Assembly (NCBI GenBank): GCA_904063045.1
Contig: CAJFCJ010000006.1
Coordinates: forward strand, 4,294,408 to 4,358,407
Direction of reading: 5' to 3'
Source: Dimorphilus gyrociliatus
Lineage: Eukaryota > Animalia > Annelida
DNA: 64,000 nt
Position numbers and translations under genes: made by a program. The notes beneath the pieces were generated by a model. The model had not been told where the DNA came from and did no database searches. It saw only the letters and a program-made list of their open reading frames with translations. Shown piece after piece: positions 507 to 10,300 of this stretch; positions within the stretch are counted from its first letter, which is position 1; the number at the start of each line of letters is the position of its first letter.

Positions 507-3500
507 ATGAGCGATAATCCAATACCTCCAAACTTTTTTCTTGCTGAAGTTCAAGCAGCTTGTAATGCTCTAGGTAAGATAATATATACTTTCCTGTTGT
601 CAATAGCATATTTACAATCTATTTAATTCGTAATAAAATAATTGCTTTTTATAAAATAATATAGGTTGTGCAGAAGAGGATGGGTATCACAAAGAACCTG
701 ATTGCTTGGAAACAGTAAAAGATCTCATTAGATTCTTGAAGCGTGAAAATGAGTATTGCGATGTTCGACGTTTTTTGGGAGAATGTCAAATTGTGCAAAC
801 AGATTTAATACCTATCATAAAATATAACAAAGGAGATAAAGAATTATTGGAAACTACTATAAGGCTTCTAGTAAATCTAACTCAACCAGCCGTAAGCTGT
901 TTTGATAATGAAGTAAGTAATTTCAAGTAGGAATGTAATTGATATTTACTGAAATAACTTTTTTTTCAGGTTCCAACACACAAAACGGTTTTAAAGTACT
1001 ATATAGAGGTACAATCTCACTTAAATCGATATAAAGAATCGTTTTGTGATGAGGCAGTAATGGCAATTTTGTCGGAGACACTTCAAGATATAATAAGCCT
1101 GGATTGGGAAAGTCAAAGAGAGAACGATCGTCTCTTGCTCGAGCGCATATTACTCCTGTTAAGAAACGTCTTACACATAGTTATAGATCATAAAACAGAT
1201 ATTCGCACGGATGACGACGCCAATATTCATGATCAACTTTTATGGGTTATGCACAAGAGTGGTATGGAAGATCTTCTATTGTATTTAGCTTCGGCAAATG
1301 AAGAAAGTTTCTGTATGCACGTTCTTGAAATCGTCTCACTTATGTTCAGGGAACAGAATGCCAAAGAATTAGCCACAGTTGGCGGAGATAAAAGTAAAAT
1401 TCATAAACGAAAAGAAGAGGAGGAATTGGCCAGACTTAGAATAACCGAAGAGGCTAAGAGAAAAGAGATGTTAGCGAAATTAGGATCGAGGCATAGTCGA
1501 TTTGCAGGAACAGTAATAATAAAAAATTTTAAATCTATCAGTGACAAAGATATGATACTTCATAAAAATATTAAGCATACAAAGGATATAAACTTTGATG
1601 CGCATAAAACTGCGAGAAGAGCACCTAAGAATAGAGCACCTATTAAAGATAGAGAAGTATCTAGGAGATCAACTTTAAGCATTCGATTATTTTTGAAGGA
1701 TTTCTGTTCGCAATTCTTAGAAAATGCTTACAATACACTTATGAGAAATGCCAATCATGCTCTCATGCGTTCAAAAGCTCAGGAGAACGATGATACATAC
1801 TTTCTTTGGGCAATGAGATTTTTTATGGAATTTTCAAGATGCGCGAATATGAAATTAGATTTCGTAAGCGAAACTATGAATATGTCAACATTTCACTACG
1901 TAGAAACTCATTTAATAAACTATCACGAAACAATAACCATTGATAAGAAAAACGCCATTCTATGGTCAAGAAGACTTCATTTGGCATTAAAAGCCTATCA
2001 AGAACTATTAAGGTATTTACAATAATTGATATAAGGCTAATGCAGCTATATAGTATCTATAAATATATATATATATATGTATAAAGTTATCTTGTGTGTT
2101 GATAGAACGCTTCATTGGATGTCATCATCATCGGACTTGGTAGTTAAAAGAAGCGCAAAAGTTATTAAAAGCAATATACTATACGTTCCTGAATTTCGAG
2201 ATGTGTTTGTAATGCTTTTACGAACTTTTGATGAAGCGAGACAATCAAGATCTTTCTTAAGAGATCTTATCGAATCATCTCATATTTTTCTTAAAATTCT
2301 AGAATCACACTGCAAAGGAAGTAATACTATAATGGTGGAACGTAAAAGAAAGAAGAAAAATAAGAAAAAGAAAATTGCAAAGAAGCCCGGCAAGAAAACG
2401 GAAGATGATTTATTTCGTATTTGGGAATCAATTAGTACTGACGTTGATGATTATTTAGCTTTAAAGATACCACTACCTGAAGAAGAAGTTCGAGTTTTCG
2501 ATCCAGCAAGTTCAATTGAACCTTCGGAGCAGAAGAAAGAGGCTATGTTAAGAATTAAGAATGCATTAATGGAGAAGGAAACTGGTACAGCAATCCTCTT
2601 GTGGAATACTGTTAAGGAATTTTGGCCTGAAGAGTTTGAAGGGGAAGAAAACGAGAATGAAGTTTTGAGGCAAATTCTAATGGCCGAGATAGAAGAAAGT
2701 GAAAATAGAGTTGAAAACGACGAGGAAGAAGACAACGAAGAGGATGTAGAAGATGTGATAGTAAGAGATGAAATAAACTTTGATTTTAAAGAATTTATAT
2801 CGAAGTTTGCTAATAGCAAGGTTAATCCATGTGAATTGATCATAAGTCAAATATTGAAAATCTAATCCTTTCAGGTCGTTAGGGCATATTCAATTCTATT
2901 AGGAGAATGGAGGGATAATTCAGCCGCTATAAATCACGCAATTTTAAAAATGCTACATAGAATAGCGTTTCAGTGTAATCTTCCTGGTCTTCTATTTCAT
3001 GCCCGAATTTTTCGTACATTTAATGAATTCTACATAAATGATTTATCAAAGAAGAGAGAATTCGATGAATTGAAAAATTTTGGTGTTCATATCATAAGAA
3101 AATTCGTCGACGCTGTTCAGAGGAATCCATCAATTCTTGTAAATTTCTTTTTTTGGAATAGTACCAATGATGCACTGGATATGATTGATGGCTTCACACC
3201 GAGGGATTCAAAGCGTAATAAGAAGGTTGCATGGACGGAAGAAGAAGAGGAACAATTGAAGAATATGTTTGAAAATCTTAAGGTTTTTTAATACTTTTAT
3301 TAACAATTGATTATCATTTAACTTTTAAAGGAAGAAGAAGAAGAAGAAAATGGTGAAGGAGGAGCTGCTGGAGATGATATCGTTGACAAACTTGTTCGAT
3401 TGCTACCGGGTAGGCCGAGAACAAGACGACAGATTATACGTCAACTAGTTCATCTAGGTCTTTTGCAAAGTGCTCGCGATTTAAAGAAAAAGAAAAAGGG

Positions 3501-4737
3501 CGGTAACGAATTAAGAAGGACTTGGAACGAAGATGAAGAAGAAGAGCTTCGTATGGCTTTTAACGAGTTTAAAGAGACTGATGACATTGTCGGGTGTATT
3601 CTCGACAGTTTGAAAGTAAAGAGATCAAAAGCGGCAGTAATAAATAAATTACTGAGCTTAGGCCTCATATCTGATAGAAAGGAAGTAAGAAGAAAGAAGA
3701 AAAAGAATAATTTCGTTTTAGAAAAAGAGCAAGATAACGAAGAAGACGAATTAGATGTTGACACTTTGGATGATATAATAACTTCTTATCAAAGAAAATC
3801 TCTGAATCCTGACATTGGTTTAGATTGGGTAATTTCTCTATTGACACGAGCTATTGATGACAGAGGCGATGGAGAAGATCAAGAAGCAACTGCTATCATT
3901 CCTCTAAAAGATGAAGATGAGGAATGCTTAGATGATCCACATTTTACGAGAATCTTAAAGAAAATTGGCTTTAGAAAACCAGATATGGTTCAAGAAAGAT
4001 ATTGGAGAATACCTGCTGACCTTTCTTGCGAATATCTTGAAGAGTGCTGCGATACTGTAAAGGTTAAAAAGGATGACTGTCCTGAAGATATTAACGTTGC
4101 TGACATATTAAAAGGCAGGCAGTTTTTAGATGATAGCTTTTCGGACACAGAGCCGTCCACGTTGGGTCGTGGACTATTTATTGGTGCTAGTGATGACGAG
4201 GGTGATGAAGAGGAGGAGGAGAGATTAAGAATTAGAGAGGAAATTGATTCTTTGTTACTTAATAAGACGCGACCCGCGTCAGAAACACTAGAGGATGTTA
4301 TTAAGGTCTATAAAAGTAGAACAAATGATTATTATCCTGGTTTAGACTGGGTTTCGACCTTCCTGAGAAAGGCTATCGATAGCAGAAAAGATTGCCTAAA
4401 TCCTGAATCTATGGCCGTTGTACCAATTAGAGAAGAAGAAGAAGAATATTTAGAAGATGAGAATTTTTCAAAAATTTTAAAGAAAATAGGTTTAAAACAA
4501 CCGGATTTAATTCAAGAGAGATACTGGAGAATTCCAGCAGAATTATCATTAGAATATCTGGAAGAAATCTCAGATACACTGCAAGCTGAGAAAAGCGCTG
4601 ACGAAGAAAACGAAGATATGGATTTTAGTGAAATGATAAGAAAACGAAGAATAGGTGAAGATAGCGATTCGGATGTTGAAACATTTTCAGTGAAAAGGAA
4701 AAAATTAATATTAGACGATGATGATGACGACGATTAG
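507..4737 (+). CDS. TIMELESS: TIMELESS / timeout (tim-2, replisome fork-protection protein), 6 exons, about 1295 aa
   Basis: Exons 507-573, 665-912, 970-2012, 2106-2820, 2875-3282 and 3331-4737, all GT-AG, sum to 3888 nt in frame. N-terminal ACNALG-x-YHKEPDCLETVKDLIRFL, Myb-like WTEEEE/WNEDEEEE repeats and C-terminal QERYWRIP PARP-binding motifs match TIMELESS. Confidence 0.95.
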
Positions 4738-5792
4738 TTAATTATCTAGTTTTTATTATAACATTAATAAATTAATCAATAAAAGAAGCACTTAAATTTT
4801 CCAACTACTTCTTTTTACTATTCTGCAATCTGCAAATTGTAATTTAATCATTAAATGAACTTGTACTTGAATCATTGGTTAACGTCTTCTGTACTTTTCC
4901 TTTATTTTCTCTATAAATATACAATAATATAGGCTTTTGTTGTAAATCGAGAACTTTTCATGGCTATTTTCGTTTAAAAAAGGCACATATAGAGTATTTT
5001 CAGATAGAAAAGGAACCCGGAGTACTTTTTCTTGTCAAAATACATCTGGTAGTTAAAAAACGAAAGAGAATGTATAAAGTATACATAAAATTGAAAACTA
5101 TATACAATTGGCTAAAGACGAACAATACAAAATAAATCTAAATAACATCTGATAACGAAGATTTTAATACTTTGTATAAGATAAATACATTCTAGGTTGT
5201 TTTTCAACCAAAGGACAATTTGTAATTGGAACAAATAGGAATAGAACCAAACAAGTTGTACTTGCTCTTTCTATATACTGTTTTTATATGTATTGGAAAG
5301 AGAAAGATGACAACAATAATAAATATTACATTAATAATAATTTATTGAGAATCTATGTTTTTTGATTTCTCTATAAATAAACTATTAATCGATACTGGGG
5401 CTATTAGTTTAACGTGACTACTCTGTACAAAAGAAATAAATTGAGAGAGGAAGGGAACCTGGATATCTTATTGCCTTAGTAAATATAAACGAATAAATAA
5501 GTATGCAGTGGCCATCTTGGGTTAAAAAAAATAAAAAACAAGAAGCTATTTAATGCAAAAAAGTATTGTGAATTAAGTCATGTTATTGGCGCTTATTTTA
5601 GCAAACGTGATTTGAATGTTGTTTACTACATATGATTGTACTCATGTAAGTGGAGTAAATAAATCACTGTCTCTTTACTTATTTAAATAATGTTACTCTA
5701 GTTTCATATAAATCTCATTCATATGTTAGGAGAAACAAACCGATTCCAACGTATTTTATTTTAATGCTATTATGTATTCTCTTCAGATTTCG

Positions 5793-7391: not shown

Positions 7392-10300
7392 TCAGATGTG
7401 AAAACAGAGACTAATTAATATTACTAAATTGACTAGAAGCGTCGATGGGCGTATAAAGGCTACAGACCCAATTGCTAAAATTTTTGGTGATCTTGTAGGA
7501 TAACGAATAAACGTTTCCGGTTGATTGTCTGTTAATGATAATTATGCCAATTATAATTAGGAGCCGGATTAATTTATAAAATAAAGCCCTTACTTAATAT
7601 AGGAAAATCATAATGTCTATGGCGGTGCTTTCTTCTGGCTTCCTTGTGTCTAGGTCTTCTTTGTACAGCATGATAAGGATGACGATTAGTCCCGTATAAA
7701 ACTAAGGTCCAGCTCTCGAGTACTGCTGGAAGAGCATCGTTTCCAGCTTCTATTGAAAGACTCCAACGTCCTTGGGCCCGTTCACCCCAAAAACTTACAG
7801 TCATAAAAGGCCAATCATTAAAGCCTACTTTTGATTTGTCTTTTCGACGTTTAGGCAAAATAATACTCTGAGTTCCGCTAGGTGAACTTAATTTAATTGA
7901 AATGTTCCCTCGGCAGTTGGACGATAATGTTATTCTACATTGGACGTGTTCCAAATAGGCAGTTTCATTCCTCGATCCTGCACAAGCTGACGTTTCCATA
8001 GTTATCTCAGTCTTAGAATCGAGGGTGACACCTGCCTTAACTAAATCATCGGAAATTACACAAATAGTCTGTTCCGGTATGGTCGACCAATTCGCTGCCT
8101 TTTTGACCATATCATGTGCATTCATTAGGCCAAATCCAAAATAAGGAGAATACTCCCTGCCAGCAGCATTTCTTTTCCAGCACTCCCTTTTGTTATAATT
8201 TTTCGGACATTTAAGACTACCCCTCTGTGAAGTTAAAACAACAAGATGCTGTACATCACGCCAGCTTAGCTCGCCATTCGCCTGTAATGCGAGAGCAACT
8301 ATACCAGCAGCCAATGGAGCTGAAGCAGACGTTCCAGTATGTGTTTCTGTACATGTTTGACGAAGATCTGTGGTAATTATCTGTAAATTTCTAGAATCTC
8401 CCGAACTGAACGTGGACGCCAGCGTCGAACTGCATGGTTCGGAATAAAAAGGGACACGACCTTCCTGAGTAGCTGACGATATAGATAACGTATAAATAGA
8501 ATTTGTATATCCATCGCAAGCACAACTGTCGTGGACTTTACCCCCATTACCGGACGCCCAAACATAGATAGATCCTAGACCTCGCCTACCGTGAGTGACG
8601 CCTTTTAATAGTGTTTCCTGCGTCAATCTTGCTGGACCGTCGACAGTAACACCATCGTCGTCTGGTCCCCAAGAGATGCTATAGATATCAATGTAGTCTC
8701 TCCTAAAACCAAGAGCTCTCGACTCAACTTGATCAGTAACGTCACCGTCTAGCATTCGAACACCGCCAATTCGGGCGTTGTAAGCAACGCCTAGTCCACA
8801 TTCGCCATTATTAGCTTTGGCAGCCACTTCCCCAGCACATCTGCCGAAAGGGACAACAAAAAATAGACAATTATAAATCGTTTTCTTTGACAAGGTCATT
8901 AAAAAAATATTGCGCACTTAAATAAATTAGACGCTTCAACTATTACTCGATTAGTCTAGATTAACGGCGGGTGGAAAAGGGGATAAAAAGGGCGTGTTCT
9001 ATCTATTTTAGTGAGGAGAACGTAAGCAATTCCGAAGAGGTAAGAATAACAAAATTTTATCACTACGTCAGCCTTATAAAAAGAAACTATAGCGTGAATC
9101 CGATAGTCGTTATCTCTTAATATACACAAACTGTTCCCTTACTATTTTACATTATCTAATTTAACCCGCCCTCCTCCCTTTCCTAGAATAACATAATCAA
9201 GATCAATTCTTAACCTGGTTCCATGTCTATTAGTATTACTACGGTCCAGCTGAGGTTGAGGGTCATCGTCTTCGCTATTTACATCGTAACTTGCCAAAGG
9301 ATCATAATTTTCTTTTAAATCCGGATGATTTCTTTCTATTCCGTCGTCCAAAATTGTAACTACAACTCCTCTTCCAGTGTAACCTAATGCCCAGGCACCC
9401 TGAATATTCATATCGTTTCTAGCAGTTATCTGTGGGGTAAAATCCATATTTAGCATTTAATTAACAATAAAAGGATTATAATTATTCTATTCGTCACGTA
9501 CATCAGAGTGCAGATACCACATTCGTTCCCATTTTGGATCGTTAAAACCATCATAACGCGCTGACGTTTGCCTAAGACGTTTTCTCCTTTTTCTCTTTGA
9601 TCGCTTTACCCTTATCTTTGGTTGCTGAGCCTCAGCCCACAAAACGTCTGGTTCTAGAAATAACATATCCAAAGGATTTGATGACCGGGTCGAACGTCTG
9701 AAATTTCTTTTCGTTCTAAACGTGTAGAAGTCATCGAATAGCTAAACAATTAAAAAATAAATAAACATCAATTAACGTTATTAATTATCCTTATTTACTT
9801 AAAAAATAAAATAAACACAATGATTTCACTATCAAATAATCTCTCTAATCATTTATCTTTAGTAATATCTTGAAAGAAAAACAGATAAATTAGTCGTCAA
9901 AGTTGATGAGATAAGATTTAAAAATGAAAAAATAGTTCTGATTAGGGTAAGTTTTTGTTTTTTATCTAACTTAAAACAGGTGAATAAAATATGATCGATA
10001 AATAGACGATGGGGAATTACATTACAAGTTCGTATACTAAACTTTCAGAACAAAACTATAAAGCATACTCGATAAATGAGAATAGAATTTCCGTATCATA
10101 CATCGATTGTTAATCAAGTACAAAAATATTTATAAATATCGTAAGGGAATAATAACAAGCCTTAAATAAAGTAGTTTTTCAAAGGTGATAATAAAATTGA
10201 TGATCATCATATGATCTTTGCCTAGAAAGTTTTATTTACCAAATGTTACACTAGAATTTTATACATCATCAATCGCCCTTACAGACGTGTAATAGAGAGC

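What the first reader, a model, noticed from the sequence alone, without database searches (positions are those of the whole stretch)
3760..4581. TIMELESS with a tandemly duplicated PARP1-binding (PAB) domain
Seen: two homologous units of about 100 aa in the last exon. Copy 1 (about 3760-4059) reads GLDWVISLLTRAIDDR...IIPLKDEDEECLDDPHFTRILKKIGFRKPDMVQERYWRIPADLS. Copy 2 (about 4282-4581) reads GLDWVSTFLRKAIDSR...VVPIREEEEEYLEDENFSKILKKIGLKQPDLIQERYWRIPAELS. An acidic linker separates them. Established: human TIMELESS has one C-terminal PAB domain with this motif (LLW...RAADDR...QETFWRIP) that binds the PARP1 catalytic domain. Inference: both copies keep the core residues, suggesting bivalent PARP1 binding or a second partner at replication forks.
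Basis: partly seen in the sequence, partly recalled or inferred. Interest (0 to 1): 0.7.

Follow-up and report, generated by a model that had tools for sequence, protein, structure and literature searches.

The report
TIMELESS with two PARP1-binding domains
The replication-fork protein TIMELESS of this small annelid worm really carries two selected copies of its PARP1-binding domain; most animals sampled have one, and chironomid midges evolved two separately.

Summary
The last exon (3331-4737, + strand) of the genome's only TIMELESS gene holds two Pfam PF05029 (PAB) domains. They lie at 3766-4074 and 4291-4596, score 63 and 64 bits (cut-off 23.8) and are 47-49% identical.

It is the PAB plus the whole C-terminal tail: 3760-4209 is colinear with 4282-4737 up to the stop codon.

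It is not an assembly artefact. The copies are old, and an 85%-identical relative assembled from three other read sets has the same structure. Both copies are under purifying selection (rough dN/dS 0.065 and 0.032) and model confidently as the human PAB fold (TM 0.90-0.92).

Of 242 PAB-bearing proteins scanned, 231 have one PAB, including the annelid Owenia. The exceptions are this lineage, chironomid midges and one unnamed sequence. These are at least two independent duplications.

Bivalent PARP1 binding is plausible but untested. The acidic residues matching human E1049 and E1056 are kept, and a canonical PARP1 gene is present. T1078 and the TQLR/SLS helix residues are not kept. An intramolecular PAB-PAB pair is a serious rival.

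Verdict: a new variant of a known kind, of moderate interest.

The parts
507..4737 (+). TIMELESS (timeout-type) gene. Six exons read by eye from GT-AG sites, reading frames and the relative's ORFs: 507-573, 665-912, 970-2012, 2106-2820, 2875-3282, 3331-4737. This gives 1295 codons.
   Evidence: PF04821 on the exon ORFs. tblastn of the relative's exon products. Sequence read. The joined model was not built or searched.
3331..4737 (+). Last exon. It holds the C-terminal Myb-like repeat of the DNA-binding domain, then PAB1, tail 1, PAB2 and tail 2. The stop codon is TAG at 4735-4737. AATAAA signals lie at 4766 and 4778.
3412..3708 (+). C-terminal helix-turn-helix (Myb-like) repeat of the TIMELESS DNA-binding domain.
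   Evidence: Aligns to human TIMELESS 857-951 (chains 7pfo_K and 6taz_B; E 2.8e-18 and 8e-20).
3766..4074 (+). PAB domain copy 1.
   Evidence: PF05029 at 63.2 bits. Own HMM at 90.6 bits. AF2 pLDDT 90.5. Best fold hit 4xhu_D, TM 0.91, rmsd 1.2 A.
4075..4209 (+). Tail 1. This is the internal, degenerate copy of the original C-terminal tail, with two 'basic-hydrophobic-acidic/Ser' motifs whose basic residues are weakened.
   Evidence: BLASTP against tail 2, E 1e-4. DNA colinear with unit 2 up to the stop codon. Nearly invariant in the relative.
4210..4281 (+). 72-nt junction between the two units, encoding an acidic run followed by a predicted short helix.
   Evidence: Has no counterpart in unit 2 in the DNA alignment.
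4291..4596 (+). PAB domain copy 2.
   Evidence: PF05029 at 64.3 bits. Own HMM at 87.8 bits. AF2 pLDDT 90.8. Best fold hits 4xht_B (TM 0.90) and 4xhu_D (TM 0.92, rmsd 0.9 A).
4597..4734 (+). Tail 2. This is the terminal tail, with basic and acidic motifs ending in a poly-Asp run. It is very short compared with the 130-400 aa tails of other animals.

Best explanation
An old, in-frame tandem duplication of about 450-520 nt inside the last exon copied the whole C-terminal module of the single TIMELESS gene, that is the PARP1-binding (PAB) domain plus the tail.

The duplication happened in the lineage of this dinophilid-type annelid, before it split from an 85%-identical relative. That much is shown.

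Both PABs are translated, folded and kept by selection. The inferred step is their function. Most likely both are working docking modules for the catalytic (ART) domain of the worm's single PARP1. One TIMELESS molecule at the fork could then hold two PARP1 molecules, or hold one with higher occupancy.
For: Architecture:
- Two PF05029 hits.
- The units are colinear through the tail to the stop codon.

Not an artefact:
- The copies share only 47-49% of amino acids.
- The same structure is found in contigs from three other read sets.

Age and independence:
- The PAB tree gives ((win1,rel1),(win2,rel2)) with support 100/100.

Selection:
- Rough NG86 dN/dS is 0.065 for PAB1 and 0.032 for PAB2. Linker and tail are also conserved.
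- 43 of 106 columns are identical in all four dinophilid PABs.

Fold:
- pLDDT is about 90 for both copies, with TM 0.90-0.92 to 4XHT/4XHU.

Binding residues:
- The positions of human E1049 and E1056 stay acidic in both copies (PMC7603486).
- Each copy keeps 20 of 38 family-consensus columns.
- The C-terminal helix, a PARP1-binding determinant in human (PMC4618055), is the part most alike between the two copies.

Partner:
- A canonical PARP1 gene is present, with zf-PARP x2, BRCT, WGR, PARP_reg and PARP.
Against: No binding data exist for any invertebrate PAB.

Human T1078 is Arg in both copies. TQLR and SLS are EYLE and TVK/TLQ. The otherwise usual Arg after the conserved Leu is Glu in both copies, so the interface may differ.

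The human PAB is reported to homodimerise through the same residues that bind ART (PMC13022067, citing Xie 2015). Two tethered PABs may therefore bind each other.

38 of 106 columns are copy-specific fixed differences, which also fits divergence of function.

dS is saturated, so the dN/dS values are rough.
Confidence: 0.5

Rival explanations
1. Intramolecular pseudo-dimer. The two tethered PABs pack against each other through the surface that otherwise binds PARP1. They form a self-capped (autoinhibited or stabilised) module that opens only under some signal.
For: [quoted passage not shown] The 72-residue linker is long enough and is itself conserved. Both copies conserve the same surface helix. 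Recurrent independent duplications would fit a benefit from making the dimer covalent.
Against: Homodimerisation is known only for the isolated human fragment.
Confidence: 0.22
2. Subfunctionalisation. One copy keeps PARP1 binding and the other has acquired a different partner or role.
For: 38 of 106 columns differ between the copies yet are fixed across the two species. In chironomids the second copy is clearly more diverged, at 58-74 bits against 90-100.
Against: In this lineage the two copies are symmetric. HMM scores are equal (90.6 and 87.8 bits), each retains 20 of 38 consensus columns, and both keep the acidic pair and the same derived helix.
Confidence: 0.2
3. Artefact or dead copy: an assembly error, or one copy that is not expressed or is decaying.
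For: No RNA evidence could be consulted.
Against: The copies are about 50% diverged, whereas assembly artefacts give near-identical copies. The frame is open across 445 codons. The same structure appears in three independent assemblies of a relative. Both copies and the linker are under strong constraint.
Confidence: 0.03

Closest known systems
Human TIMELESS PAB domain (residues 1000-1098; PDB 4XHT, 4XHU, 4XHW)
   Same: Same Pfam family and same fold (TM 0.90-0.92). It sits after the Myb-like DNA-binding domain in the same way. The acidic residues at E1049 and E1056 are kept, as is the WRIP core.
   Different: Human has one copy and this worm has two. T1078 is Arg here. The last helix is acidic (EYLEE) instead of basic (TQLRR). 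The tail is far shorter.
Chironomid midge timeout/TIMELESS (Clunio marinus CRK86997.1, Chironomus riparius, Polypedilum vanderplanki)
   Same: These proteins also have two PF05029 domains in tandem. The repeated unit also includes a post-PAB motif.
   Different: The origin is independent: separate clades in the tree, and a shared origin is rejected by the AU test at p 0.021. The second copy is much more diverged. Other Diptera sampled (Eurosta, Lutzomyia) have one copy. My paper searches found no description of this architecture.
Drosophila circadian TIM PAB
   Same: It is a homologous domain.
   Different: It is a single copy with an extra helix that is thought to prevent PARP1 binding (bioRxiv 10.1101/2022.07.27.501640). 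This shows that the PAB fold alone does not prove PARP1 binding.

Membership tests
TIMELESS/timeout (Tof1/Swi1) fork-protection proteins | N-terminal TIMELESS domain (PF04821) | tested here: met
   110.4 and 62.8 bits on the exon ORFs. 212 bits in the genome scan, at a single locus.
TIMELESS/timeout (Tof1/Swi1) fork-protection proteins | Myb-like DNA-binding domain before the PAB | tested here: met
   Aligns to human residues 857-951 of 7pfo and 6taz. The relative's products carry PF26019 and PF27570.
Timeless PAB domain (PF05029) | Sequence score above Pfam's gathering threshold, for each copy alone | tested here: met
   63.2 and 64.3 bits against a cut-off of 23.8.
Timeless PAB domain (PF05029) | Fold of the solved PAB | tested here: met
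   AF2 pLDDT 90.5 and 90.8. Foldseek TM 0.90-0.92 and rmsd 0.9-1.5 A to 4XHT/4XHU.
PARP1-binding PAB (function as in human) | Acidic residues at human E1049 and E1056 | tested here: met
   D and D in copy 1, E and E in copy 2. This comes from the alignment and the mutant described in PMC7603486.
PARP1-binding PAB (function as in human) | T1078 and the helix residues TQLR 1089-1092 and SLS 1097-1099 | tested here: not met
   R in both copies, EYLE in both copies, and TVK/TLQ. Only the Leu (or Val) positions are kept (PMC4618055). These residues also vary among other animals.
PARP1-binding PAB (function as in human) | A PARP1 partner with HD-ART in the same genome | tested here: met
   G000 C9:1373970-1377765 (minus strand) carries zf-PARP x2, BRCT, WGR, PARP_reg and PARP.
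PARP1-binding PAB (function as in human) | Physical binding to the PARP1 ART domain | not testable with these tools
   This needs pull-down or ITC, or a complex prediction.

The most novel reading that the evidence does not exclude
The PAB-plus-tail module of TIMELESS has been tandemly duplicated independently in at least two animal lineages. From my own knowledge, both lineages have compact genomes: dinophilid annelids and chironomid midges.

The reason would be that a covalent PAB pair gives a new regulatory mode. It could be a self-capped PARP1-binding surface, or a scaffold for two PARP1 molecules at the fork. On this reading the worm's symmetric, equally conserved pair is the cleanest natural example.
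Probability: 0.15. Interest if true: 0.6.

Novelty: new variant of a known kind. Interest (0 to 1): 0.35.

Why it matters
The PAB is the only mapped link between the replication fork protection complex and PARP1, and its role is still unclear. It is partly redundant with the DNA-binding domain in G4 replication (PMC7506991), and it homodimerises through its PARP1-binding face.

A natural protein with two equally conserved PABs, together with an independent second case in midges, offers a simple test of three options: the domain acts as a monomeric docking site, as a dimer, or as an avidity device. Otherwise this is an ordinary example of domain duplication within a known gene.

Tried and rejected
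- **Word search with the 445-aa exon.** It reaches only proteins of 245-779 aa. It gave the close relative and some single-PAB fragments.
- **Word search with the Clunio two-PAB region.** It found only two further chironomids, so it says nothing about Drosophila or mosquitoes.
- **Naming the other two-PAB sequences.** P0010, P0011, P0017 and P0019 come from Logan or IMG and carry no name. P0017's two copies are sisters, which means either a third duplication or gene conversion.
- **Xie et al. 2015 (the 4XHU paper).** It is not held, so the atomic interface could not be mapped. I used the mutational data in PMC4618055 and PMC7603486 instead.
- **P0099.** Its two 'stretches' are one split domain, not a duplication.
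- **Papers.** Reviews and structure papers on TIMELESS mention no tandem PAB. The Dimorphilus genome paper does not mention timeless.
- **Joined spliced protein.** All searches were done exon by exon, by reference.

Full report
**The observation**

The + strand of window 507-4737 encodes a TIMELESS/timeout-type gene. I read six exons from GT-AG sites, reading frames and the ORFs of a close relative: 507-573, 665-912, 970-2012, 2106-2820, 2875-3282 and 3331-4737, giving 1295 codons. Nothing here looked human.

The exon ORFs match Pfam PF04821 (TIMELESS N-terminal domain; 110 and 63 bits). The last exon matches PF05029, 'Timeless PAB domain', in two stretches. Scanned separately, copy 1 scores 63.2 bits and copy 2 scores 64.3 bits, against a cut-off of 23.8; the linker matches nothing. 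The two units are 47% identical over 117 residues (E 3e-35).

A six-frame scan of the whole genome (77.9 Mb, 349 contigs) finds PF05029 only at these two places. It finds PF04821 only at this locus. This is therefore the single TIMELESS gene, and it has a duplicated PAB.

**What exactly was duplicated**

The similarity does not stop at the PAB. The stretch after PAB1 aligns with the terminal tail after PAB2 (BLASTP E 1e-4). In a DNA alignment, 3760-4209 runs colinear with 4282-4737 right up to the stop codon. A 72-nt junction (4210-4281) has no counterpart in the second unit.

Each tail carries two short 'basic, hydrophobic, acidic/Ser' motifs of the kind repeated in the long tails of other animals. 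In the internal copy the basic residues are weakened.

The event was thus an in-frame tandem duplication of the entire C-terminal module, PAB plus tail, inside the last exon.

**Real, old and selected**

The word search found one close relative, P0001 (85% identical), from Logan assemblies of three different read sets. It has the same exon structure, and its contig carries a DIT1_PvcA gene just upstream of TIMELESS. P0001 also has two PABs.

In a maximum-likelihood tree of 51 PAB domains, the four dinophilid-type domains form ((window PAB1, relative PAB1), (window PAB2, relative PAB2)). Support is 97-100, on a long stem. The duplication therefore predates the split of the two species, and there has been no recent gene conversion.

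Nei-Gojobori estimates between the two species give dN/dS of 0.065 for PAB1 and 0.032 for PAB2. The linker and tail are also strongly conserved. dS is saturated, so these ratios are rough.

Of 106 aligned columns, 43 are identical in all four domains. A further 38 are copy-specific but fixed across species.

An assembly artefact or a dead copy is therefore very unlikely.

**Fold and key residues**

AlphaFold2 models built with a 50-row alignment reach mean pLDDT 90.5 and 90.8. The only significant PDB matches are the human Timeless PAB entries 4XHT, 4XHU and 4XHW, with target-normalised TM of 0.90-0.92 and rmsd of 0.9-1.5 A.

Both copies keep all invariant and near-invariant columns of the family. 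Each keeps 20 of 38 consensus columns.

Residues reported as essential for human PARP1 binding are E1049, E1056 and T1078 (PMC7603486), plus TQLR 1089-1092 and SLS 1097-1099 (PMC4618055). The table maps them through the alignment.

| Human residue(s) | Copy 1 | Copy 2 |
|---|---|---|
| E1049 | D | E |
| E1056 | D | E |
| T1078 | R | R |
| TQLR 1089-1092 | EYLE | EYLE |
| SLS 1097-1099 | TVK | TLQ |

The last helix has a lineage-specific basic-to-acidic change that both copies share, and it is the part most alike between the copies. These derived states arose before the duplication and have been kept in both copies. That fits both copies facing the same partner surface. It also means the interface may differ from the human one.

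The genome encodes a canonical PARP1, with zf-PARP x2, BRCT, WGR, PARP_reg and PARP on C9.

**How common is the two-PAB architecture**

A profile of the two copies was searched against 1.84 billion representative proteins and gave 115 hits. Only a few had more than one stretch.

I then added 120 named full-length TIMELESS proteins and scanned everything with my own PAB HMM. Of 242 proteins, 231 have one PAB, 2 have none and 9 have two stretches. One of those nine, P0099, is a single split domain.

The single-copy set includes the annelid Owenia, a nemertean, many molluscs, echinoderms, hemichordates, vertebrates, cnidarians, Priapulus, Trichuris, krill, a tick, beetles and Hymenoptera. It also includes the dipterans Eurosta and Lutzomyia.

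The true two-copy proteins fall into three groups:
- the window and its relative;
- a set that includes Clunio marinus, Chironomus riparius and Polypedilum vanderplanki, all chironomid midges, whose second copy is more diverged;
- one unnamed sequence, P0017, whose two copies are each other's sisters.

The chironomid second copies form their own clade (98/96). An AU test rejects a single origin of the dinophilid and chironomid second copies at p 0.021, although I named that group after seeing the tree.

In the midges, too, the repeated unit includes a post-PAB motif. The architecture is therefore rare but recurrent, with at least two independent origins.

The depth of the event within annelids is open.

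**Mechanism**

Shown: a tandem, in-frame duplication of the C-terminal module, with both PABs folded and constrained, and a PARP1 partner in the genome.

Inferred: both copies dock PARP1 ART, giving two sites per TIMELESS. I put this at about 0.5.

[quoted passage not shown] 2015). Two tethered PABs could then form an intramolecular pair, which I put at about 0.22. Subfunctionalisation (about 0.2) fits the 38 copy-specific fixed columns but not the symmetry of the two copies.

The 4XHU paper is not held.

**Organism**

Earlier agents of this scan name the genome as the miniature annelid Dimorphilus gyrociliatus. I did not verify this directly. The genome size (77.9 Mb here against 73.8 Mb published) and the short introns (48-93 nt here against a published median of 66 bp) agree with PMC7854359.

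**Verdict**

I found no description of a tandem PAB in the papers searched. This is a new variant of a known kind and of moderate interest.

Noticed in passing
window 4075-4281 and 4597-4734: After each PAB comes a short conserved motif (hydrophobic-x-x-hydrophobic-basic, then acidic/Ser). A similar post-PAB helix, roughly 'R-F/Y-x-x-L-K-x-L-A-x-x-K', appears once in single-PAB animals and twice in chironomids. I did not find a function for it in the papers read.
   Followed up: partly
window 4597-4734: The TIMELESS tail after the last PAB is only 46 residues, against about 130-400 in other animals sampled. This fits protein and genome compaction in this lineage.
   Followed up: no
L021 (Logan SRR18067444) 714-2216: The unnamed insect-like TIMELESS C-terminus P0017 has two PABs that are each other's closest relatives (100/99). 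This is either a third independent duplication or gene conversion between older copies.
   Followed up: partly
window 7577-8917 (- strand): A large exon of a furin-like proprotein convertase (Peptidase_S8 at 129 bits, P_proprotein at 86 bits) lies tail-to-tail with TIMELESS.
   Followed up: partly
L001 1779-3045 (- strand) and just upstream of the window: In the relative's contig, DIT1_PvcA (isocyanide-synthase family) exons lie upstream of TIMELESS.
   Followed up: no
G000 C19:1711105-1868075: Several PARP catalytic-domain matches cluster on contig C19, eight of them within about 160 kb. This may be a local expansion of PARP-like genes.
   Followed up: no
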